Below, piece by piece: positions 1 through 43,563 of a stretch of 64,000 nt of DNA. Under the pieces are notes generated by a model. It worked only from the letters and a program-made list of their open reading frames with translations, was not told the DNA's origin and did not search any database. The translations under genes and the position numbers were made by a program. The stretch lies in the IMG/VR virus record IMGVR_UViG_3300030019_000003, positions 124,001 through 188,000 of that record; one strand, 5' to 3'. The first letter of the stretch is position 1. Each line of letters begins with the position of its first letter.

Positions 1-36
1 GTTCCGACTGTTATCTTTAGAAAGGATAGTGTTGGA

Positions 37-261
37 ATGACATTTATGCTAAAAGATTTATTCGATAAAAAAGTTATAGAGGATAATACTAACTTTAGTA
101 TCGTTATACCATCAGGCATAAGTGTCATTGGTTCTTTTAGAATTGGTAGTTCAGGTACTGCATTTGATTTTTCAGACGTACCTGATAAAAAGATTGTGAT
201 GTCGGGTGGCGGACGTATATGCAATATAAAAACAAGAAAGTTATTTAACTTAACATTATAA
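37..261 (+). CDS. hypothetical protein (74 aa)
   Basis: ORF with AAAGGA upstream; no recognisable motif. Confidence 0.5.
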   Translation: MTFMLKDLFDKKVIEDNTNFSIVIPSGISVIGSFRIGSSGTAFDFSDVPDKKIVMSGGGRICNIKTRKLFNLTL

Positions 262-276
262 AAGAAGGAAAATAGT

Positions 277-753
277 ATGGAGTTTTTTATTCAAATGTTA
301 CCAGTAATACTAATATCGTCTGGTATGGCTTATTTTGTGCAATGGTATTTTAACCATAAGCAGTTAGTGTCTGACTTAGAAGATCTAGATAAAGAACTTC
401 CACTACCGACAGCTATTATGAAAAGTTTGGAACGTAATCTAATACGCACACTTGTAAATGTTAACGAACTTATTAATACAGGAAAAATAGCTGAAGCCAC
501 AAAATTACTTTGTGAAACATGTTCTAGTGGTTGTGGCTCTAAAGCTACTTTTGAGTATGCGTTTTCAGCAGTGACGCTTGCTAGGAATGTGTCATCTTTT
601 AAAGACCGGTGGGATTACGTTATCATGGTTTTCAAGATCTATAAGAATCTAAATGGTGATGGTGATCAAAATACCAATCTAGACATACCTGATGTTAGCC
701 CTAAAGATTTAATAAAACAATGTGGGATTAACTTAAAGCTAGTAACGAGATAA
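277..753 (+). CDS. hypothetical protein with N-terminal membrane anchor
   Basis: AAGGA RBS; hydrophobic N-terminus (MLPVILISSGMAYFVQWYF). Confidence 0.7.
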   Translation: MEFFIQMLPVILISSGMAYFVQWYFNHKQLVSDLEDLDKELPLPTAIMKSLERNLIRTLVNVNELINTGKIAEATKLLCETCSSGCGSKATFEYAFSAVTLARNVSSFKDRWDYVIMVFKIYKNLNGDGDQNTNLDIPDVSPKDLIKQCGINLKLVTR

Positions 754-759
754 AGGAAA

Positions 760-1308
760 ATGATGAGAAATGACGGAAAGACCTATATCAATATAGGTAA
801 AGACGCTAAAACAGATTTAGGTAAAACACTTTGGCTGTATGCCGGTTTAAAGAAACAAATCACGTATGTTGATGAACAGGGCAAGAAGTTTAAGTTCATG
901 TCTTTAGGAGGCCTTTATGAGTATCTACGAGTACTTAATGTTATTAAGACATATAACTTTGAAGGTGTGCCGTTAGCTATTCTAGAAATGCTTGATGGTT
1001 TGAAAGAATCAAAAGGATTTAATAGTTTAGCCGTTGGTACTTCTATTATTCGTAAACTGGTTGAAACCAGACGATATACCCTAATAGATTTTCAAAAAGA
1101 TTCTGCTGCTAGGGCAAGTGTACTTACTGCTATGGTAGACACTTTGAACAACCAACCTAAATTGGTAAAAGCACTTGTTGAAAACACTTTACCATTAGGT
1201 TCTTTTAGGGTTATTGGGTATACATCTATATATCCAAATGTATCTGAAGCATGGGTTAGCGAAAATTGGAATAAAGCACTTGAGATTGTTAATTCCAATA
1301 AAAATTAA
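760..1308 (+). CDS. phage protein of the (H/Y)INI..T.LG family, possibly NADAR-like
   Basis: AAAGGA RBS; YINIGKDAKTDLGKTL and NTLP motifs shared with 54439..55038; NADAR link is inference. Confidence 0.5.
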   Translation: MMRNDGKTYINIGKDAKTDLGKTLWLYAGLKKQITYVDEQGKKFKFMSLGGLYEYLRVLNVIKTYNFEGVPLAILEMLDGLKESKGFNSLAVGTSIIRKLVETRRYTLIDFQKDSAARASVLTAMVDTLNNQPKLVKALVENTLPLGSFRVIGYTSIYPNVSEAWVSENWNKALEIVNSNKN

Positions 1309-1311
1309 CAC

Positions 1312-1320
1312 CATATTATT
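1312..1320 (+). promoter_or_regulatory. putative early phage promoter (YATATTAT motif)
   Basis: CATATTATT, one of ~11 intergenic copies on + strand. Confidence 0.55.
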
Positions 1321-1324
1321 AAAA

Positions 1325-1437
1325 ATGTAGGGGCAATAGGGTGCAGTCTTAACCGACTGATACCTAGAGTAGCATAAACTACATAACCGGCAGGGATCAC
1401 ACCGTAGCTACCGTAAGGTAGTCTAGAAGTTATTTTT
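1325..1437 (+). ncRNA. candidate small structured RNA
   Basis: No ORF; follows promoter motif; hairpins CAGTC/GACTG (1344-1359), GTAG/CTAC, CTACC-GTAA-GGTAG (1408-1421, GNRA loop); ends at a T tract. Confidence 0.4.
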
Positions 1438-1459
1438 TAACAGGTCACTATTATATTGA

Positions 1460-2005
1460 GAATAAAAAATAACCGCTTAACAAAATTAGCGATTACTCTT
1501 CTCAGTTGGTTTATAACGGTCGCCCCCGGCCGTATAACTGACACCAGGTGATACATAATGCCCAGCAGGTTATGTATCGATAACAGTAATAGCTGTTATA
1601 CCTACCACTGCTGCAAACCTACTGCATGACAAAAAATCCGACAAATCGTTAGCAGTATTGGGAACACGCATGCAGAGAGTCGGTAATCGTTATGCGTGTT
1701 AAACTTGGTGCCATAATGGGTTTTCACATGCAACATGTGAAAAAGCTTAGCTTTTCGCCTGACTTTAAGTCATATCGCGATGTGATGCAAGCAGCTTAGA
1801 CTAACGTCTCGGCAAGCCGGTAAACCGGAGGGTGGGATTGGCAAAAAGACTAATATTAAAAGTACGATGTTACTAATAATTACTAATGGAATGCTGTATA
1901 TGTTGCAAACAGTTTGACTTAGTCTAGCGGCCAATGGTCGTTATGTCCACATCGGAGTTACTAGTTAAGCAGCCGCCAAGCGCAACCATAGGTTGGTATG
2001 CTAAA
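1460..2005 (+). ncRNA. candidate large structured ncRNA of unknown family
   Basis: No ORF of 60 aa or more; GC-richer than flanks; many helices (1550-1558/1570-1578, 1580-1586/1593-1599, 1663-1671/1692-1700, 1721-1730/1734-1743) and long-range pairings (1542-1549/1703-1710, 1797-1804/1919-1926); promoter-like CACTATTATATT at 1446-1457. Confidence 0.6.
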
Positions 2006-2010
2006 ACACG

Positions 2011-2019
2011 TATATTATT
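2011..2019 (+). promoter_or_regulatory. putative early phage promoter
   Basis: TATATTATT motif. Confidence 0.5.
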
Positions 2020-2024
2020 AATAA

Positions 2025-2210
2025 ACTAAAAAAAGGATATTAGTAATACATTAGCTATACTAAGCGTCGAAGACTGATAATATTTGCGTAGGCCACGTAG
2101 GTATTGTCAGTTTATTTTATATGGGTCGAGATGACCCACCTCTTTCGCAGTAATCGTTCACACACTCTGTAACTACTTCACGCACTAGTGCGTGAAGTAG
2201 TTATATTTAT
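2025..2210 (+). ncRNA. candidate small structured RNA
   Basis: No ORF; helices 2073-2083/2101-2111 and 2122-2127/2133-2138; closed by 34-bp palindrome. Confidence 0.4.
2170..2203. terminator. perfect 34-bp palindrome, likely terminator
   Basis: TAACTACTTCACGCACTAGTGCGTGAAGTAGTTA followed by T-rich sequence. Confidence 0.7.
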
Positions 2211-2287
2211 ATTTTCATTTTTTTATAAAGATACATTATAAAAGTAATACTATAGCAAAGCTATATAAAGAAAATGAGGAGAATAAA

Positions 2288-2833
2288 ATGGATTACGCAC
2301 TCTATGAAAGAATGTTTAATGTTGTAAATGCTAGACTATTTACAAACCCTGCAGATAAGAGTTTACGCGGAAATGATCTAGCAAATGAGATTAGTTTTCA
2401 TATTTCAAATATGATTAATACTATTACAGGTAACTCGTTATTAACACAAAATAACAGAATGGACTGTATCAAAATAGTAATGGATAGACTTACAACACAA
2501 TACGAGCTTTCTAAAAGAATACTTTCATTGTTCGATGGTGAGACTATTACTATTGCTGATGTTAACAATGAAGTCTATGGCGATATAGTTGTTAACATCA
2601 TTATGGACAGGTTGGAGACAACTAAACAACATGAAAAGATCAGTAGTGCTTATCTACCGTTAAAAGTCTTTTTAAGTACAAATAAGTTAACTGTCGATGC
2701 TGAAGTTTCTCCTAGAGAAACATCATATCAAATATTTCTAGCTAATCCTGAATATGAAGCGTTGATTTGTAAACTTATAGCAGAGATCATCATGTCAAAA
2801 TCAGTTGCTGAGAGCATAAAGTTTACGTGGTAA
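2288..2833 (+). CDS. hypothetical protein (181 aa)
   Basis: GAGGAG RBS; intact ORF. Confidence 0.8.
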   Translation: MDYALYERMFNVVNARLFTNPADKSLRGNDLANEISFHISNMINTITGNSLLTQNNRMDCIKIVMDRLTTQYELSKRILSLFDGETITIADVNNEVYGDIVVNIIMDRLETTKQHEKISSAYLPLKVFLSTNKLTVDAEVSPRETSYQIFLANPEYEALICKLIAEIIMSKSVAESIKFTW

Positions 2834-2861
2834 TAAAATTATAAAAATTAAGGAGTATCCT

Positions 2862-3278
2862 ATGAATGAGTCTAAAAGGTCAAATGAGTTTCAAGTTGGC
2901 TTGATGCTAACAATTAACATAGTTTTTATGTTAGGTTTTTCAACATTAACTCTATTAGCTAAACTAGCTGATAGTTTTGACGTTATGAATTTATTATCAC
3001 TTTTAACGCTAATCGTGTTTCTTTTAAACAGCGGTAGTTTTTACAGTTGTTTCAACTCAGCGCCTTATGGGTTTAAATATATCGTATTTTTGAATTATGG
3101 TATGTTTATCACTATCATAATGTCCGTTTTAGCTATAGCATACACTGTAGTTAATCCTGTTATACTGTTAATGATATTTATAGTGTCATTAGCCTTTACG
3201 CTCTTTATAGTAATTGGTGCTGTATTTCATTATGCTAAAGAGCATTTAAAAAATAAACGCAGTGGGAGAATATTATGA
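2862..3278 (+). CDS. multi-pass membrane protein (about 4 TM)
   Basis: AAGGAG RBS; four hydrophobic segments. Confidence 0.75.
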   Translation: MNESKRSNEFQVGLMLTINIVFMLGFSTLTLLAKLADSFDVMNLLSLLTLIVFLLNSGSFYSCFNSAPYGFKYIVFLNYGMFITIIMSVLAIAYTVVNPVILLMIFIVSLAFTLFIVIGAVFHYAKEHLKNKRSGRIL

Positions 3279-3733
3279 AAGAGATGATTGATATAACACC
3301 TGATATAGGAGTGTTTGTGATTACAACAAATGTTGCTAGGGAGGCTGGGTATGTTAAAATCAAAGGTAAAATCTTCATGCTTTTTAGACTTGTTAAAAAG
3401 CATGAATGTTCTAAAGTTGAAAGTTTCAGTCTTACGCTGTATGATAGTAAAACAAACACAACAAGTCCGTTACATCATGACGTAGTGGAAGGGTTTGATG
3501 GAGATCTAATCATCGTGCGCTGGTGTGTAAATGGTCCAATTGCTGGATACGATAAATTGATTATTAATGTTAATGAGTGTATCCATGTTATGAATTTATT
3601 CTTCCCACCTATAACAGTTATAACTGCATACGAGATGGACGAGTACAACACATTGTCACGAGGATACGTATCTATATATACAGGGGATATGTACAAATCA
3701 CATTCATCTAGTGGCACACCATTACTAGACTAA
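3275..3733 (+). CDS. hypothetical protein (152 aa)
   Basis: ATGA overlap with upstream stop; GGGAG RBS. Confidence 0.75.
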   Translation: MKEMIDITPDIGVFVITTNVAREAGYVKIKGKIFMLFRLVKKHECSKVESFSLTLYDSKTNTTSPLHHDVVEGFDGDLIIVRWCVNGPIAGYDKLIINVNECIHVMNLFFPPITVITAYEMDEYNTLSRGYVSIYTGDMYKSHSSSGTPLLD

Positions 3734-3736
3734 AAG

Positions 3737-3892
3737 ATGCGTACCCTAGTAATACTAGTTATAATCACTATGGTTGCTATAGCTGTGTTTTTAGAAATAC
3801 TTTGTAGTACGGGTAATAGTGGTGATAATGTAACTGATAAGCATGATACAATGTCTGAGGTAGTTGTTATCAAACATGTTATTAAAAATTAA
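3737..3892 (+). CDS. small single-pass membrane protein (51 aa)
   Basis: Read manually: MRTLVILVIITMVAIAVFLEILCSTG...; fills the gap between two genes. Confidence 0.55.
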   Translation: MRTLVILVIITMVAIAVFLEILCSTGNSGDNVTDKHDTMSEVVVIKHVIKN

Positions 3893-3903
3893 AAGGAATT
3901 CCT

Positions 3904-6900
3904 ATGAAAAGCATTATTGAAAAAATGAGAGAGCAATTAGCCAGTGGCGCCAGTATTGGCTCTAAAAAAATAGCCATATCCATAAAACCTATACCTATGG
4001 AATCTTTAGAAGATTTAGGTAAAATGTGGGCTGTTGGTATTAAAGTAGGAAGATCTAAAAGAGTACCCTACAGTATGAAACCGCGAGAGATTAGTGATCT
4101 CATAAATATCGATGTCATAAAAGTGAGCAGTCAGTATACGGGTATAAGTACTTATATTAATTCTGTGCTATACAACGCAACTGAATCTAGCGCACATGAA
4201 CCGGTAGACACGGAATCGCTTAAAGAACGAGATATGCTGGATGATGTTCTCGGGTATTTTATCATACTATCTGCTTTAAAAGAAGATATTGAAGACGCCG
4301 CTGTACGCTCATCAATTGCAGGTGATGACATTAATATGCTATTCTGCAGGATAAACGCTGTGAAAGATTTCTATAGCCTTAAAGAACCTATAAAATTAGA
4401 GGCCTCACATTTAGAATATAGTGCGATTCACAGATTATCTTGGAAGACACCGTGCGGCAAACATTTATTTTTAGGAGATGTAAGTGACGATAGTATTAGC
4501 GGCTTTGAGGAAATGGGCGGTATAGATCTCATTATCTTGCAAAATGAAAATGAGATAGCTAAGAAAGTTGAAGAATCAACCACTACCGATAGTAAATCTA
4601 AGATACAAACTATCATAGATAAGATCGGTACAAATGCTGATAGAGGTAACCCTAACACTATCAGTATACGTTTTTACCTTAAAGGTGAGAATGTAGGCAC
4701 ACTTACAAGTGAGGAACTTGAGATTGCTGTTATTCTAAATGAAAAAATAGTGATAACAAATACCGACACCACGATGCATGATTTTACTTTGCTTATAGAC
4801 TATGTTTCAAAAATTATTAATGCGGAAATTGTTATAAATAATGTCGCATTTGATAAAAGATCATTTGGTATTGAATGCGGTGCTTTACCAGATAGTATTA
4901 AAGCAAATGTAAAAGGTCTTTATTTAATTTACAGATACTACTTCGGCGGCAAATATGGCTTTCAACTTTGTCCTACGAATTCGACGATGAAAATTCTTAA
5001 GGACTATTTTGGAGGGAGATCATATCATCCGGCGGCTGCATCGAAATTGGCTAGCGATGGGTATATGTGCCTGTTGGCAAGTTGTGTGTTTAAGGATACT
5101 GTCTCATTAGCAGTTGATATTGATAAACAAAGATCATACAAGGTACCCTACACAGATTTATACTTAGATATTGCCAATGGATCCTACAGGCTACATTTAG
5201 CAACAATAAGTTTAGAAGATTCAGAAAGTATTCGTGACCTTTATAACGATCTTCTTGTAAAAGGTATAGCGACTCTTAGTGACTTAATCCATATTACTAA
5301 AGAGCCTGTAGCGACGACATTTAAAGAACTTACCGGTATAGCTGAAATTAGCGACTGGAAGAAAACAGGTGATGAAGAAAATGTTGTTACAACACTAAAA
5401 GCTATAACAGAAGCGATATCAGTGCTTCTTGATGATAGTGTTAGTGACGATGGAAGCTTTACAACACACTCTTTAGATACACTTTATACAGCATTTAGTG
5501 GAATAATTGGTGACAGTGTTGTTGCCGAATATAATCGTCTGCCAGTGATGGTTCTAATTGTAGACAAAGTCAATGCGAATAGTTCTATAGTAGATCTTAA
5601 GTCTATTAAGTACATGATTGGTGATCCTAACGTCATACATCAGTGTGAACTTATATACGAGCACCCTTTTACAAAACAGATTAGGATTAATGAGTATTGT
5701 ATCCACTCAAATGTTTTGCCTAAGCACAATATTTATTTGTGTCAGGCTAACCGTATGTGTAATTCGTCAAAAGAAATTGCTAAAACGTTGGCTGAATCTT
5801 TAGCTGAAAGAAAACAACCTAAAAAAGAAGGAGAGAAAAGTATGGAAAATACCGCTAACCCTACTTCAGGAAATGTGCTGAATCATGAGACTGAAAAAGT
5901 TTCTATAATTAGGGATGACGTTAAAAGGCGCGTTGAAAACAATGTTATTCCACTGCTAAAAAACTTGGACGGTGATGCCGAAAGTGTTGCTGATACACTA
6001 AGTGATGTTTTAACACTGATGCGTGAAATTGCTGAAAGCGGAAAAGAAAGCTGTGCATCTTATAAGGTAGCAGTAGCTCAGATTAGGATTCTAAATTTAT
6101 TAAAGGAAGCCAGTCATACTGATATGTTTAGGATTATAGATATGGCTATTGCTATTAATGTTGTTGATGGCGAAAATAAACAGCTATTTCGATATGCCAC
6201 CACCGTACAATGTGTAAACCTACCGCGAATAAGTCGTGCCAGTTCAAAACGTTTACAGCATCTTGTGTTATTTCCTAAAAACTACATCATTGATATGCCA
6301 AATATCGGTGTTGCGAAGTTTGCGTTAAATTTGTTTACTGAAACACAGCAAACTACCTCAGATGGATCTACTGGATTTATGCCGACAGCGGATAAAAACG
6401 GGTTTGTTTCTACTGGCTATCCCGATATGCCACCAGTATATGGTAATCCTGGTTTTAATTTTGGAGGTTTTTATAATATTGGTAAGCAGTATCCTGATTA
6501 TAAAGCTGAAGATAAACAGGTATTCGATCGATTTAAATGTGCTAATACGTCTGGCGGTAAGATGTATGATATTCTAGAAGCAAAGCGTATGGAATTATTC
6601 GTACAGATGGAAAAATCATTAAGGGGCACTTCTGATAACTTTCGAAATTTAGCTGCTAATTACGATACTCTAGTTTCTAAGGTCGATACGCTACAAAAAC
6701 GTATAGATGTTTTAGAAAATGGTACTGCTGTTAAGAAGAGTTCTAAAAAAGAGACTGCTGAATTGTTAAAGTATTATGATAGTATTGCTATGCACGTCGG
6801 AAATATCCTGACGAGATATGGTTTAGACTATATTAGTAAACAAAATTCAGTAAGGCAACAAGGTGATAAAGATTTTGGTACGACCATACCCGATATTTTC

Positions 6901-7302: not shown

Positions 7303-7382
7303 AACATATTATTTAATTAATAACGAACAAGTACGTTAGTAATTGTGAGTTAAACTAATAACCTATAACTAGTTTACTAGTT
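7303..7382 (+). repeat. 80-bp promoter/leader repeat, copy 1
   Basis: 78/80 identical to 35350-35429; contains CATATTATT. Confidence 0.9.
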
Positions 7383-9633: not shown

Positions 9634-11019
9634 TTAAGCAGCTCTACGTTTATCTAATTCTATTTTTTCTAATAGAGTATCAATATTAAGAGTATCTAAA
9701 GAAGATGGGTCTAATATGTTATAAAGATACTGTATCTTATTTTTAGATTTAGCTACTAAACCAAGATGCTTAATAAGTTTCATTTCACTAGCAAGTCTTT
9801 CTATCTCTGTACGAATACGTATTTGATCTTCACGTTTACGTACTGCATCCATACCGCCAGCTTCTTCTACTTGGGTAGCTTTAACTGTTGTTAAGGTATT
9901 ATTAGGATTTAAACCATAGAATGATTTGTTAGAAGCCTCTGTCAAGAACCAGTATGGTAATAACCAAGCAACAACCATATCATCATGGCTATCAGAAGCA
10001 TGGTCTATTCTACCATTTTTAGATCGTAACCCTATAATCTGATTAATCAATCCGTTATCTCTTACAGTGTTACCTGTGTACTTAGTAGACGCCATAAAGG
10101 CTGCACCATAAAGTTTATCCCTTGCTTGTCTACCTGCCCCAGATGTTGCAAATCCAAACATGCTTCGATATTTGACATAGACGTTACTTTCTCTACGTAG
10201 CATACTAACATTAACAACTTCATTAAGATACTGTTTATTTACCATGCAGTCATTAACAACCCAGTTAAAGATACGTTTAAACGGATCAATAGTGTGCATT
10301 GGTAATATACGTAGTAAGTTATCAATGATCATAACACCACTAGATCTTCTTTCAGGAACTAGTATAGTATTATTGTATTTTATTAACAAGTCACCTATAA
10401 ACTCTGAGAATACGATAAGGTTAGTTTCATTATAGATACCTGTTGCGATAGTCTCACCTGATGATGCGTCTCTTATGATCATAGCAATATCATCTTTATT
10501 AACAGCATCAGAAGTATCTAGACCTACTATAAGTTTACGTGTTGGTAATCCAGCTTTAACTTCTTGTTCAGAAACATACCAGTTAGTGATATAACCACTT
10601 TTAGATAGTTCGGTATACTCAACTTTAGATTGTGATTTTTGAATATCCTCAATAACCTCTTTTGATAAAGGTGAAACATCTGAACCTTTAGCCCATAGGT
10701 TAAGGAAGTCTGCTCCGGCATTCTCACCTTTTGACATAGCCTCACTAATTTTCTCTTTTAACCACGCATCGGTATAACCTAATTGTCTATGGTTATATTC
10801 TAATAGTACTCTTAGTTCACCTGTAGGGCTATTTTTACATATAACAGATTTAAGAGCTTCAAGATCTTCAACATCAAAAAGTAACTCAGACCATCGCATA
10901 CTTTTAAGGTATAATTCTTCATAAGCAAACTTACCAGAATCAGTACTAATATACCCGGGGGTTGTTGTAAAAATATTGCCATAAGGAGCGTTAGCTGCTT
11001 TAGCAGAGTCTCTAGCCGC
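9634..11019 (-). CDS. terL: terminase large subunit, exon 2 (end of ATPase plus nuclease domain)
   Basis: Frame is open upstream of the called ORF: AARDSAKAANAPYGNIFTTTPG; GLDTSDAV and HDDMVVAW nuclease motifs. Confidence 0.9.
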   Translation of the reverse strand, partial: AARDSAKAANAPYGNIFTTTPGYISTDSGKFAYEELYLKSMRWSELLFDVEDLEALKSVICKNSPTGELRVLLEYNHRQLGYTDAWLKEKISEAMSKGENAGADFLNLWAKGSDVSPLSKEVIEDIQKSQSKVEYTELSKSGYITNWYVSEQEVKAGLPTRKLIVGLDTSDAVNKDDIAMIIRDASSGETIATGIYNETNLIVFSEFIGDLLIKYNNTILVPERRSSGVMIIDNLLRILPMHTIDPFKRIFNWVVNDCMVNKQYLNEVVNVSMLRRESNVYVKYRSMFGFATSGAGRQARDKLYGAAFMASTKYTGNTVRDNGLINQIIGLRSKNGRIDHASDSHDDMVVAWLLPYWFLTEASNKSFYGLNPNNTLTTVKATQVEEAGGMDAVRKREDQIRIRTEIERLASEMKLIKHLGLVAKSKNKIQYLYNILDPSSLDTLNIDTLLEKIELDKRRAA

Positions 11020-11458
11020 CTTGAATATTCAATGGGTTCGTTAGACCACATCCGCACCTCTATGTGCAGCTCACACTTTCATGTGACGATCAGGCTATCT
11101 CATCCTGAAAGGGCTTTCGCCGAATAGATCATATCTTTATCTTATATTTACTTAAGATAAACTTCGTTTCGATTTAAGGGATTTCATACCCGCCCACTTG
11201 GGCCCTACACCAATAACTGGTTGATCGTTGAGCACATCCCGTATATCACTTATGATACTTAGGGGCTTCGCTGCGTTGGTCGCCCAATCCTATTAAGTTT
11301 TTACTGTCCCGTTATGAATCATTACTCTAACGGTGTTATAGTATCTTTCGATCTATAAGTAGTATTAATAGGCTCTAAGGGGTTCTCCGCAATTAGAAGT
11401 TTTTGCTATATAGTGTCACCACTATATGGGGCACAGGCGGTTTTTAGGCCGCCATTTT
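11020..11458 (-). mobile_element. group I self-splicing intron (IA-like, 439 nt, no ORF) in terL
   Basis: 5' exon ends in U (GGU), intron ends in G; P element AAUUGCGGAGAACCC (11380-11394), Q-like CAACGCAGC, R GUGCUCAACGAUCA (11221-11235), S AAGAUAUGAUCU (11126-11137); removal restores frame MLPAQG|AARDSAK. Confidence 0.88.
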
Positions 11459-12199
11459 ACCCTGGGCTGGAAGCATAGCTGGGATGGTTATGTCGGCATA
11501 ATTAATATAAGCAATCTCATCTACTTGGTTCGTTGGGAATGTCATACCACGTCCAACATTATAAGCTGATTTAGGATTGTTCTGCGCCACTGATGTTATG
11601 TATTGTGTATTATTAGAATTAACCGTTATCTTCTCAGTGTTATTCGTATCTGTTTTAGATCTCAACTGTAGCATAGCTGGGAGCTCACTCATGATGTCTT
11701 TGATACGTTTAACGTTGTTGACTCGCAGAGTATCATCTTTGGTCAGCAAGTTGATGCTAGAGCGTACAGACCCTACTGAAAGTAACCACACCATAAGAAT
11801 ATCTGTTGATACTGATTTACCAGTTTGTCGAGGTTGTATTAGTAATGTAGTCACATGATTAAAATATAACCAGTATAATGAAATGTTACCACGATTAGCT
11901 CTTAACACAACACCTTTTTCAACACCTTGTGCTGGAACTCTAACTACTTCTCTAAAGAAGTACCAAGGATTCTCAGAACACTCATCTACTATAAGAATAA
12001 TCTCTTCAACTGAAAGATCATCTGAATGGGGGTCAACCCCTTGAAGAGCTGGATTATGTAATGCTAAACAAAAGGCACAGTTCTTTATACCCATCTTGTG
12101 CATTTTGACAGCATACATTTTAAAAGAGTCATTAGTTGTCTTTAAGTCGGCTATGGCTCCAGGATGTTTATTAACCCAGTCGTTTAAATATAATATCAT
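11459..12199 (-). CDS. terL: terminase large subunit, exon 1 (ATPase N-terminus)
   Basis: GGAGGA RBS before ATG 12199; ENPWYFFRE, Walker A PRQTGKS, Walker B QVDEIAY; spliced product 708 aa. Confidence 0.9.
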
Positions 12200-12285
12200 T
12201 ATTAATCCTCCCGACACTATATTTTTTTATATAAGTCATATAATTTTTTAATAGACGTATTTTGCCTGAGTGTAAGGAGAAAGAC

Positions 12286-30076: not shown

Positions 30077-32266
30077 ATGGCAATCTTTGCAGATGGCGAT
30101 AAATGCGCAAGACTATATACAAGTTTTTCAAAATCTTTTACACAAAAAGGCTTAGCAGGAAAACAAGCACTAACCTCTACAGGTCAAACACTCTCAAGTG
30201 AGAGTCTTACAGATGCTGAGAAAACAAATGCTATTTCAATTGGCGATGGCATTAGCGAAACTATTAAACAAGTTCTTTCTGCTGAAGGTCTTTATACACC
30301 AGGCGATGTTTCACATGAAAAAGGCTTACAAGCTGCAACAATGATTGCTAAACTTGGTAGCTTTGATGTTTATAAAAATGTTGCTGGTACAAAAGCAGCT
30401 TCAGCTAACGCTGGTGTTGTTACATCTGAACAACTTGGTTACAATTCAGGTACTGTTTTTGGTTCACTAGGTAATGAGGCTTATTCTGAGCAAGAGTATG
30501 ACAACAGTCTTTACTACTCTATCATGTTTAACTATGCTGTCGTACGCCAAGAAGACCTTATTGAAGCATTCTTCCCTACTATCGTCATTGATCCTGCACA
30601 AACTGCTATCGAAGTCGAGATCAGCCTTCTTAGCTATATGAAAGACTTTGTACATCCTCTTGATGGTTCACCTATCGAAGATACGATGGAAAAAGACTAT
30701 GTTATCAAAACGCTTTACTCTGAAAAATGGCTTGCAAGTAACAACCTTAAAATCGTTCCTGTTCTTAAAGCTGAAACAGCTGCAAGATTCATGACAGACC
30801 TTACTGTTGTTGATAGTTCAGGTTATGAGACAGTTGATACAGCTCCGTTACTTGTTAACCAAGATCACAACCTTATCTCATTGAGTGCAACTGATCTTAT
30901 GCTAGATCGTGGTATCATGGATAGATCTGATTACCTTGACAAAACACTTAAAGTTAAAAACATTTATGTTAAAGTTACAAGTGTTGATGGTACAGGTGCA
31001 GATGTTTCTGAAACATTCCGTATCCCGTTAAGTATTTACCTTGCTTCTAACTTCATGCCTGTTCAACAAGGTGAAGTAAGACGTTACCAATTGAATTTTG
31101 AGACAAATGATATCATCCTTGATAGCACTTTGAAAACAGCTAAAAACTCTATCTCAAATATCTTTAAAACGTTACTTGCTGCAAATGCCGTTAAACTACA
31201 TGTATCACTTTCTGGTAAAGTTGATTTACGTACAGGTACTATGAGTGTTGCTCCGATCAAAACTGAATTGTACAAAGTGTACGATACTGTTGGTAATGAA
31301 ATTTCTAAAAAAGATCCTTCATATGCTACGATCCTTGCTGGTTTCAAATCAATCGAAGTTACAGCTTATGATCCTGAAGCATATAGAACCAATGAGAACA
31401 CAAGAACTCCAGGTGTTTATTTAACATCTGATGTTGTTAAACATGCTTACCAAGTTCCATTCTTATCAGACACAAGTATTCTTGGACCTGAAGTAAAAAT
31501 CGGTGGTAACCTTTCTGATCTTAGCACTATTTCTTCTGTTATCGTTTCTACAGGCGCTAGACAATCACTTGCTGGTTTCAAACGTTTGAAAGACACTGCA
31601 ACTGAATTGAGTTATATTGCTAAATATGGTATCAGTGCAAATGCAAGTATTACAGGTATCGGTAGATATTTTGTAAACCCTTACTTTATTGCTGCGCAAA
31701 TCAATGTTAACGAATCTGTTGACAGTATGTCTTCAAGTGATCGTTTTGAAGATGTATCTGCTATGCTTAGAAATAAACTTCGTGATGCAGCTATGGAAAT
31801 GGCTCTTAACTCTAACTATTATGTTGCGTACAGAACACTTCGTCCAGGTAAACCACTTCGTGTTGTTATCGGTACAGGTGCAAGAACAAAAATGTATATC
31901 ATGGGTAAAAACAACGAAGACGTTATCAAACTTTCAGATGAGATTGAAGCATATGTATATGCTACTCCATACTCTGAGCTTGAAGGCGTTGTCTATATGT
32001 CATTTGCTACAGATGAAGGTTCTAAAGATTCTAAAATGGATCCATTTAACTTTGGTAACACAATCTGGTCACCATCATTTGTTGTTGATGTTAAGAAACA
32101 AACAAACGGTGCAAATAACCGTCTTATCTCTAACGTTCCTCGTTATGCGCATATCGTTAACCTTCCAGTTCTTTACTATGCAGAGATTTCTGACTTTGGT
32201 AGTGTTCTTGGTAAAGTTAGCAAAAATGTTAACATTCTTGGTACTGTTGAAATCGAACAAAAATAA
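30077..32266 (+). CDS. major capsid protein (phiKZ gp120-like)
   Basis: 729 aa; strong codon bias; QEDLIEAFFPTIVIDP and VPRYAHIVNLPV motifs; S/A/G-x-E sites in N-terminal propeptide. Confidence 0.9.
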   Translation: MAIFADGDKCARLYTSFSKSFTQKGLAGKQALTSTGQTLSSESLTDAEKTNAISIGDGISETIKQVLSAEGLYTPGDVSHEKGLQAATMIAKLGSFDVYKNVAGTKAASANAGVVTSEQLGYNSGTVFGSLGNEAYSEQEYDNSLYYSIMFNYAVVRQEDLIEAFFPTIVIDPAQTAIEVEISLLSYMKDFVHPLDGSPIEDTMEKDYVIKTLYSEKWLASNNLKIVPVLKAETAARFMTDLTVVDSSGYETVDTAPLLVNQDHNLISLSATDLMLDRGIMDRSDYLDKTLKVKNIYVKVTSVDGTGADVSETFRIPLSIYLASNFMPVQQGEVRRYQLNFETNDIILDSTLKTAKNSISNIFKTLLAANAVKLHVSLSGKVDLRTGTMSVAPIKTELYKVYDTVGNEISKKDPSYATILAGFKSIEVTAYDPEAYRTNENTRTPGVYLTSDVVKHAYQVPFLSDTSILGPEVKIGGNLSDLSTISSVIVSTGARQSLAGFKRLKDTATELSYIAKYGISANASITGIGRYFVNPYFIAAQINVNESVDSMSSSDRFEDVSAMLRNKLRDAAMEMALNSNYYVAYRTLRPGKPLRVVIGTGARTKMYIMGKNNEDVIKLSDEIEAYVYATPYSELEGVVYMSFATDEGSKDSKMDPFNFGNTIWSPSFVVDVKKQTNGANNRLISNVPRYAHIVNLPVLYYAEISDFGSVLGKVSKNVNILGTVEIEQK

Positions 32267-35349: not shown

Positions 35350-35429
35350 AACATATTATTTAATTAATAACGAACAAGTACGTTAGTAATTGTGAGTTAA
35401 ACTAGCAACCTATAACTAGTTTACTAGTT
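35350..35429 (+). repeat. 80-bp promoter/leader repeat, copy 2
   Basis: 78/80 identical to 7303-7382. Confidence 0.9.
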
Positions 35430-43404: not shown

Positions 43405-43560
43405 ATGTTGCCAAGTATCAAAGGTTCTAGTGTCTTAGAAAATGCTATTGCAAAATCGCTTAATGCCAAGATTGATCAGATTGAAAAATCTGAAAGAGTC
43501 TCACGTGTCGCAGGGTTAGTAGTTATTGCTACTATCCTTATATTCTTATTCGTATTATGA
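43405..43560 (+). CDS. small protein with C-terminal TM helix (51 aa)
   Basis: Read manually; AAGGAG RBS, own promoter motif and terminator. Confidence 0.65.
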   Translation: MLPSIKGSSVLENAIAKSLNAKIDQIEKSERVSRVAGLVVIATILIFLFVL

Positions 43561-43563
43561 TAT

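What the first reader, a model, noticed from the sequence alone, without database searches (positions are those of the whole stretch)
1460..2005. Candidate ~550-nt ornate ncRNA in a jumbo phage
Seen: the only ~1 kb ORF-free stretch in a gene-dense window; GC-richer than its flanks; almost continuously paired. Helix 1542-1549/1703-1710 encloses four hairpin elements (a multiway junction), helix 1797-1804/1919-1926 encloses a second domain, and there are perfect 9-10 bp stems. A promoter-like motif precedes it. Known: phages carry large ncRNAs of unclear function (GOLLD, ROOL). It lacks tRNA, tmRNA, RNase P and group II intron signatures that I can recognise. Inference: a new ornate RNA class, possibly a scaffold, ribozyme or anti-defence decoy expressed early.
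Basis: partly seen in the sequence, partly recalled or inferred. Interest (0 to 1): 0.8.

Follow-up and report, generated by a model that had tools for sequence, protein, structure and literature searches.

The report
Non-coding RNA locus in jumbo phage
A 1-kb gene-free stretch in an uncultured phiKZ-like giant phage is a real non-coding locus that probably makes a structured RNA, but only its first ~240 bases show good evidence of RNA structure and the claim of a new "ornate" RNA class is unproven.

Summary
The gap 1309-2287 is real. It is the longest ORF-free stretch in the window, it is richer in G+C than the other intergenic regions, and no stop-codon reassignment opens it. Rfam and ARAGORN find nothing in it.

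A distant relative (48% identity in the upstream gene) has a similar ORF-free gap of about 880 nt at the same place. The two gaps share two short islands at the same offsets and a terminator with a T-run at the end. Their bodies show no sequence similarity.

A strain about 95% identical keeps 1455-2201. It changes there at about half the estimated third-codon-position rate, tolerates three 1-nt insertions, and lacks 1323-1454. One metatranscriptome contig lies at 1481-1642.

Structure is strand-specific only for 1473-1712 (z -4.0 on the + strand, -0.8 on the - strand). The second domain, 1713-2005, is not better than shuffles. No covariation test was possible.

Verdict: a likely rightward non-coding transcription unit with a structured 5' domain. 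Whether it is one long ornate RNA remains open.

The parts
760..1308 (+). Upstream 182-aa gene. It is the only gene syntenic with the gap in the distant relative.
   Evidence: 48% identical homologue P0002 is followed by a similar gap in L007-L010. A language-model lead points to NADAR/Phage_30_3 but is not confirmed.
1309..1327 (+). Conserved island 1, just after the stop codon. It holds a copy of the phage's promoter-like motif ATATTATT[AC]AT at 1313-1323.
   Evidence: 24 nt are 83% identical to L009 625-648. The motif recurs upstream of genes: 9 of 36 hits are intergenic against 8% intergenic DNA, Fisher p 0.0018.
1323..1454 (+). Variable, dispensable leader segment, with a hairpin at 1408-1421 and a T-run at 1433-1438.
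   Evidence: Absent from the ~95% identical strain in run X23 (joint 1322/1455). Not conserved in L009.
1445..1472 (+). Conserved island 2 (CACTA..ATATTGAnnATAAAAAA), the likely start region of the main RNA.
   Evidence: 14 of 16 nt match L009 778-793, at the same offset from the gene end (+145 and +146). The RNA contig starts 9 nt downstream.
1473..1712 (+). Domain 1: a multi-branched fold. The closing helix ~1477-1496/1683-1702 encloses hairpins at 1505-1541, 1550-1578, 1580-1599 and 1608-1676. This is the best-supported structured part.
   Evidence: z -3.98 on the + strand against -0.82 on the - strand. The metatranscriptome contig lies at 1481-1642. The listed variant changes are compatible with the fold but not informative.
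1713..2005 (+). Domain 2: hairpin 1721-1743, long-range helix 1745-1752/1963-1970 and several short hairpins. Weakly supported.
   Evidence: z -1.14 on the + strand and -2.36 on the - strand. Helices with pair probability of 0.7 or more are listed. Most listed variant changes and all three 1-nt insertions fall here.
2009..2066 (+). Internal promoter-like motifs: an exact ATATTATTAAT at 2012-2022, and 2037-2062, a 73% copy of the element upstream of gene 2288.
   Evidence: (D1). There is a tentative 17/23 match of 2054-2076 to L009 1309-1331.
2071..2123 (+). Terminator-like hairpin T1 (19 pairs) followed by a T-rich tail.
   Evidence: pair probability of 0.7 or more.
2168..2224 (+). Terminator T2: a perfect 17-bp inverted repeat followed by T-runs.
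   Evidence: (I3). It sits in the most stable 300-nt window of the whole 64 kb after correcting for G+C.
2238..2287 (+). Promoter-like element and ribosome-binding site of the downstream gene 2288-2833. Not part of the RNA.

Best explanation
The gap 1309-2287 is a real non-coding locus of a deep-branching, uncultured phiKZ-like jumbo phage. It is most likely transcribed rightward. Transcription would start at phage promoter-like motifs, either island 1 at 1311-1327 or island 2 at 1445-1472; a natural strain fuses the two. It would end at one of two intrinsic terminators (2071-2123 or 2168-2224), giving a non-coding RNA of about 0.65-0.9 kb.

The best-supported structured part is a ~240-nt multi-branched 5' domain (1473-1712).

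The body sequence is not conserved between the two lineages that carry the locus, while its position, size, orientation and boundary signals are. I therefore think it acts as a folded RNA that binds protein, as a scaffold or decoy, rather than as a ribozyme with a conserved catalytic core.

Shown: absence of coding capacity, positional conservation, conserved boundary islands, terminators, a reduced substitution rate, and strand-specific excess folding of domain 1.

Inferred: transcription start and end, that it is a single transcript, and any function.
For: - No ORF is present and no recoding opens one.
- Three 1-nt insertions are tolerated in a ~95% strain, while the coding contigs listed for that strain show no gaps.
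- G+C is raised, as in the genuine group I intron of the same window.
- The distant relative has an ORF-free gap of 876 nt after the homologous gene. It folds at z -5.5 on the + strand against -2.6 on the - strand and ends in a 14-bp hairpin plus T13.
- Islands conserved at identical offsets resemble a motif enriched upstream of genes.
- Two + strand terminators close the locus.
- The gap has 30 substitutions in 747 nt (4.0%), against an estimated 8.7% at third codon positions; Poisson p 9e-7.
- The only contig of an RNA library on this 6 kb lies at 1481-1642, just after island 2.
- Domain 1 folds at z -3.98 on the + strand only.
Against: - The bodies of the two lineages show no sequence similarity, and no consensus structure comes from a sequence alignment of their 3' ends, the only part tested.
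- No covariation data exist.
- The whole 1460-2005 stretch folds equally well on both strands, and domain 2 is not better than shuffles.
- The variant strain keeps the folding energy no better than random mutations do (p about 0.1 for the whole, 0.2-0.5 for domain 1).
- Internal promoter-like motifs at 2012 and 2037 suggest more than one unit.
- The RNA run was found by searching with this stretch, its contig is low-depth (3.6), and contigs carry no strand.
Confidence: 0.5

Rival explanations
1. A composite regulatory spacer rather than one RNA gene. It would be a cluster of promoters, short leader or 3'-UTR-derived RNAs and tandem terminators that insulates two operons. PhiKZ has many short 5'-UTR-derived RNAs made by premature termination, and this would resemble them. 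The 550-nt core would have no function in trans.
For: - Three to four promoter-like motifs lie in the gap, at 1313, about 1453, 2012 and 2037.
- Two to three terminator-like hairpins are present.
- The first 132 nt are dispensable.
- Domain 2 is not significantly structured.
- PhiKZ makes 17 candidate 5'-UTR-derived short RNAs (PMC10914365).
Against: - It does not explain about 550 nt of G+C-rich, ORF-free sequence kept at similar length in two distant lineages.
- It does not explain the halved substitution rate over the whole 747 nt.
- It does not explain the strand-specific fold of domain 1.
Confidence: 0.2
2. Non-functional DNA: the decayed remnant of one or more genes, or tolerated filler.
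For: - Body sequence is not conserved between lineages.
- Indels, including a 132-nt deletion, are tolerated.
- The folding excess of the whole stretch is modest and not strand-specific.
Against: - Substitutions run at about half the third-codon-position rate.
- G+C is above, not at, the level of this phage's coding DNA.
- A second lineage has an ORF-free stretch of similar size at the same place, with conserved boundary islands.
- The genome is otherwise gene-dense, about 92% coding.
Confidence: 0.1
3. A cis-acting DNA element such as a replication origin or packaging site.
For: It is a long non-coding region, and many inverted repeats are present.
Against: - G+C is raised rather than lowered.
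- There are no iterons; only four short two-copy direct repeats.
- Cumulative GC skew keeps rising across it, with no turn.
- The boundary signals are promoter- and terminator-like and all on one strand.
Confidence: 0.07
4. Hidden coding sequence: small proteins, or a gene read with a reassigned stop codon.
For: Short ORFs of 31-54 aa exist.
Against: - All three stop codons are frequent in all three + frames, and no single reassignment opens more than 375 nt.
- None of the short ORFs has the strong AAAGGA-type ribosome site seen before this phage's genes.
- The variant strain has 1-nt insertions inside ORFs 1934-2029 (+) and 1770-1934 (-), and mostly first- and second-position changes in ORF 1692-1799.
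Confidence: 0.03

Closest known systems
GOLLD and ROOL (large ornate RNAs common in phages and prophages)
   Same: A large (0.5-0.9 kb), G+C-rich, ORF-free, phage-borne stretch with many hairpins, a promoter and a terminator, and unknown function.
   Different: No match to any Rfam model, even at E up to 10. No tRNA genes lie nearby, none in 64 kb. There is no conserved sequence core between the two lineages. Multimer or cage formation is untested.
phi29-type packaging RNA (pRNA)
   Same: A phage-encoded RNA whose sequence diverges almost completely between relatives while its position and, for pRNA, its secondary structure are kept (my own knowledge). This is the pattern that would best fit the data here.
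   Different: pRNA is about 120-174 nt, belongs to small podoviruses and sits near a genome end. There is no Rfam hit here. Conservation of structure between the two lineages has not been shown.
[quoted passage not shown]
   Same: Same broad phage group. They are promoter-proximal structured RNAs ended by premature terminators (PMC10914365). The 3' part 2063-2224 has that look.
   Different: Those RNAs are short and attached to a gene's UTR. The core here is about 550 nt, is separated from the next gene by two terminators, and has no sequence relative in GenBank phages.
Group I intron (one is present in this same window)
   Same: The same genomic signature: a long ORF-free gap with raised G+C in an AT-rich genome.
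   Different: The intron at 11070-11455 (-) scores 52.2 bits against Intron_gpI and splits a gene. The same kind of permissive scan finds nothing in 1250-2350. The gap lies between two complete genes, and the upstream one ends at the same residue in the relative.

Membership tests
GOLLD / ROOL (Rfam families) | Match to the family covariance model | tested here: not met
   No hit at gathering score in the window. No hit at E up to 10 with permissive filters in 1250-2350.
GOLLD / ROOL (Rfam families) | Frequent adjacency to tRNA genes in phage or prophage DNA (my own knowledge) | tested here: not met
   ARAGORN finds no tRNA in the 64-kb window.
GOLLD / ROOL (Rfam families) | Covariation-supported ornate multi-domain structure | not testable with these tools
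   Only identical copies, one partly listed 95% variant and one unalignable lineage are available.
Group I intron | Conserved catalytic core (match to Intron_gpI) and interruption of a gene | tested here: not met
   No hit in 1250-2350. The upstream gene is complete and the same length as its homologue. Positive control: the real intron at 11070-11455 is found by the same method.
tRNA / tmRNA / RNase P / 6S / SRP RNA | Match to ARAGORN or Rfam models | tested here: not met
phi29-type pRNA | Match to the Rfam pRNA model; size about 120-174 nt | tested here: not met
   No Rfam hit. The candidate unit is 0.24-0.9 kb.
phi29-type pRNA | Secondary structure conserved between relatives despite sequence divergence | tested here: inconclusive
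   A sequence-based alignment of the 3' parts gives no consensus fold, -10 kcal/mol. No structure-based pairwise aligner was available.
phiKZ-type UTR-derived short RNAs | Promoter followed within about 200 nt by a conditional terminator, upstream of a gene | tested here: inconclusive
   Motifs at 2012 and 2037 followed by hairpins at 2071-2113 and 2168-2205 fit this for the 3' part only. Transcript ends are unknown.

The most novel reading that the evidence does not exclude
The locus encodes a new class of large phage non-coding RNA, kept in deep-branching phiKZ-like phages by position, size and fold rather than by sequence, as pRNA is. It would act as a protein-binding scaffold or as a decoy against a host RNA-sensing or RNA-cutting defence.
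Probability: 0.2. Interest if true: 0.7.

Novelty: new variant of a known kind. Interest (0 to 1): 0.4.

Why it matters
No large structured RNA turned up in my literature searches on phiKZ-like, nucleus-forming jumbo phages; only short UTR-derived RNAs are reported for phiKZ. A dedicated RNA of 0.25-0.9 kb would add an RNA player to a phage group studied mainly for its protein-based nucleus and its defence evasion.

The case also shows that the 'long, G+C-rich intergenic region' signature picks out a genuine ribozyme (the group I intron) and this candidate in the same window.

The practical value is limited for now. The phage is uncultured, its capsid protein is only 27% identical to that of any cultured phage, and only two lineages carry the locus.

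Tried and rejected
- Rfam at gathering and at E up to 10, and ARAGORN: nothing in the gap. Rfam on the relative's locus: nothing.
- GenBank phages, by blastn with the gap, with 8 kb of the window and with the relative's gap, and by tblastn with the upstream protein: no match.
- More homologues of the flanking genes: IMG/VR, JGI metagenomes, GTDB genomes and two protein collections gave only identical copies plus one distant lineage. Homologues of the downstream gene have no gap in front of them.
- A two-island DNA pattern scan of IMG/VR: 75 hits. All were chance matches in AT-rich DNA except the phage's own contigs.
- Fetching the 95% variant contig through its partial gene product: not on record. 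All other contigs that could be fetched are 100% identical in the gap.
- Sequence alignment of the two lineages' gaps: not better than shuffles. Consensus folding of their 3' parts: meaningless.
- Antisense targets in the window: nothing beyond 14-nt chance matches.
- Stop-codon reassignment: rejected.
- Origin of replication: no iterons and no skew turn.
- Sigma-70 promoters: no more than chance.
- Upstream protein: the AlphaFold model is too poor to search with (pLDDT 48). The NADAR lead from the protein atlas is not backed by Pfam, PDB or PADLOC.
- A first genome-wide z-score scan with shuffles timed out. It was replaced by a regression on G+C.
- No covariance model was built. With a single sequence and no alignable relative, a negative search would have said nothing.

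Full report
WHAT THE WINDOW IS

The window encodes a PhiKZ-type major capsid protein (30077-32266, E 6e-107) and a split RNA polymerase beta subunit. It is identical to part of a 252-kb IMG/VR contig found in fen and peat metagenomes. It has no DNA relative among GenBank phages. Its capsid protein is at most 27% identical to that of any cultured phage. It is therefore a deep-branching, uncultured phiKZ-like jumbo phage with 34% G+C.

THE OBSERVATION

- No ORF of 60 aa or more lies on either strand between 1309 and 2287.
- This 979-nt gap is the longest in the window. The second longest (10900-11443) turned out to be a group I intron.
- G+C is 0.42 for 1455-2005, against 0.34 overall and 0.27-0.32 for most other intergenic regions.
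- Rfam gives nothing at gathering score and nothing in 1460-2005 even at E up to 10. The only weak hits are generic matches to the terminator hairpins further right. ARAGORN finds no tRNA or tmRNA.

The claim of 'almost continuous pairing' needs qualifying.
- The 546-nt stretch folds at -159 kcal/mol, z -3.2 against shuffles, but the opposite strand gives z -3.1.
- Against G+C-matched 300-nt windows of the same genome, the core is only 1-2.3 sd more stable. The real outlier is 2001-2300, which holds the terminators.
- Split in two, 1473-1712 is strongly and strand-specifically structured: z -3.98 with 0 of 200 shuffles on the + strand, against z -0.82 on the - strand.
- 1713-2005 is not: z -1.14 on the + strand and -2.36 on the - strand.

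IT IS NON-CODING

- All three stop codons are frequent in all + frames, and no single reassignment opens the gap.
- None of the short ORFs has the strong AAAGGA-type ribosome site that precedes this phage's genes.
- A ~95% identical strain in a wastewater run (X23) carries three 1-nt insertions, after 1842, 1912 and 1969. The coding contigs listed for that strain have no gaps.

A POSITIONAL HOMOLOGUE

The upstream gene (760-1308, 182 aa) has only one other relative in the protein collection searched with it (word-indexed, 5.8 billion clusters). That relative is P0002, at 48% identity.

On its contigs (L007-L010), P0002 is followed by an 876-nt stretch with no substantial + strand ORF. That stretch ends in a 14-bp hairpin plus T13. 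Its body folds at z -5.5 on the + strand against -2.6 on the - strand. The gene after it is unrelated to the window's downstream gene. Homologues of the window's downstream gene have no gap in front of them. The gap therefore travels with the upstream gene.

Overall the two gaps are no more similar than shuffles, but three things are shared.
- The 24 nt right after the stop codon are 83% identical.
- A second island, CACTA..ATATTGAnnATAAAAAA, sits at 1445-1472 and at the same offset in the relative (+145 and +146 from the gene end), with 14 of 16 nt matching.
- Both end in tandem strong hairpins followed by T-runs.

A third island (2054-2076 against L009 1309-1331, 17 of 23) is only tentative.

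SIGNALS

Island 1 holds ATATTATTAAA. This is one mismatch from a motif, ATATTATT[AC]AT, that lies 22-35 nt before the start codons of several genes (13454, 15745, 23617, 32372, 63125). The motif is over-represented (36 hits against 18.9 expected) and enriched in intergenic DNA (9 of 36 hits against 8% of the sequence; p 0.0018). I read it as a phage promoter; this is inference.

Island 2 (ATATTGAGAAT) looks like a variant of the same motif. Further copies lie at 2012 (exact) and 2037. Two + strand intrinsic terminators follow, at 2071-2123 and 2168-2224. Sigma-70-like sites are no more frequent than chance.

NATURAL VARIATION

The X23 strain lacks 1323-1454, which joins island 1 directly to island 2. 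It keeps 1455-2201 with 30 substitutions. That is 4.0%, the same as the coding flanks overall (4.1%). In the flanks, 15 of the 21 listed changes are at third codon positions, which gives an estimated third-position rate of 8.7%. At that rate 65 changes would be expected in the gap (Poisson p 9e-7). The gap therefore evolves about twice as slowly as near-neutral sites.

Only 19 of the 30 changes were listed, so structure tests are partial.
- The variant's folding energy is unchanged (-234.5 against -233.8 kcal/mol). Random mutations of the same kinds give -225.6 with sd 6.6, so p is about 0.1.
- For domain 1 alone, p is 0.2-0.5.
- 1883 C>T together with 1922 G>A keeps a pair in an alternative helix, 1882-1886/1919-1923.
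- The most probable long-range helix in the ensemble is 1745-1752/1963-1970. My reading of the listed changes at 1969/1970 is that they keep it through a G-U pair.

EXPRESSION

One peat metatranscriptome (X24) holds a single contig on window 1-6000. It is 162 nt long, 100% identical, lies at 1481-1642 and starts 9 nt after island 2. Nothing from the flanking genes is present.

Caveats: the run was found by searching with this stretch, the depth is 3.6, contigs have no strand, and DNA carry-over cannot be excluded.

WHAT IT MOST LIKELY IS

It is most likely a rightward non-coding transcription unit of about 0.65-0.9 kb, or two to three tandem units. Its 5' domain (1473-1712) is a real folded RNA.

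The body has no conserved core in the only distant relative, so a ribozyme is unlikely. A protein-binding scaffold or decoy, where shape and hairpin display matter more than sequence, fits better. This functional step is inference only.

Rivals:
- A regulatory spacer with several short RNAs (0.2).
- Non-functional remnant (0.1).
- A DNA element (0.07). It has no iterons, no skew turn and raised G+C.
- Hidden coding sequence (0.03).

COMPARISON WITH KNOWN RNAs

It is not a member of GOLLD, ROOL, group I or II introns, pRNA, tmRNA, RNase P or any other Rfam family. No tRNAs are nearby. It resembles GOLLD and ROOL only in being a large phage-borne RNA of unknown function. It resembles pRNA in diverging in sequence while keeping its position.

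The literature I searched reports only short (89-196 nt) UTR-derived RNAs in phiKZ (PMC10914365; PMC13282480). No large RNA is reported in this phage group.

VERDICT

The locus is real and probably an RNA gene. The 'ornate two-domain' model and the 'new class' label remain unproven, because no alignment for covariation can be made from the two known lineages. Interest 0.4.

Noticed in passing
window 11070-11455 (-), gap 10900-11443: A group I intron: Rfam Intron_gpI, 52.2 bits against a gathering score of 50, E 2.5e-12, full model. The whole-window gathering scan missed it. It lies between ORF 11444-12217 (terminase large subunit N-terminal part; phrog_2, E 1.7e-42) and ORF 9634-10899, so the terminase gene is probably split. 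Splice sites and the identity of exon 2 were not worked out.
   Followed up: partly
window 1313, 2012, 13421, 15716, 23595, 32337, 63090 (+): A recurrent motif, ATATTATT[AC]AT, lies 22-35 nt upstream of start codons. It is over-represented and enriched in intergenic DNA, and is probably a promoter of this phage's own RNA polymerase.
   Followed up: partly
window 7343-7382 and 35390-35429 (+): A 40-nt repeat, identical apart from two adjacent bases, lies upstream of genes 7433 and 35474. It contains a small palindrome (AACTAGTTTACTAGTT). None is expected by chance. Function unknown.
   Followed up: no
window 760-1308 (+): The upstream 182-aa protein is nearest, by language-model features (score 0.93), to viral clusters carrying the Phage_30_3 and NADAR families, which would suggest an ADP-ribose-removing counter-defence enzyme. 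Pfam, PDB and PADLOC give no support, and the AlphaFold model is poor.
   Followed up: partly
window 1323-1454: A 132-nt presence/absence polymorphism between strains. The wastewater strain (X23) joins 1322 to 1455, between two copies of a similar AT-rich motif. The missing piece contains 1380-1395, which is 88% complementary to 1561-1576 in hairpin 2 of domain 1 (I5).
   Followed up: partly
window 43406-43561 (+): A small gene of 51 codons with a good ribosome site sits in what looks like a 357-nt gap between convergent genes. Strong hairpins flank it on both sides.
   Followed up: no
window 2037-2062 and 2238-2263 (+): Two copies, 73% alike, of a second promoter-like element (AGTAATAC..TAGC..CTA). 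The second lies just upstream of gene 2288. The first lies inside the gap, ahead of hairpin T1 (D1).
   Followed up: no
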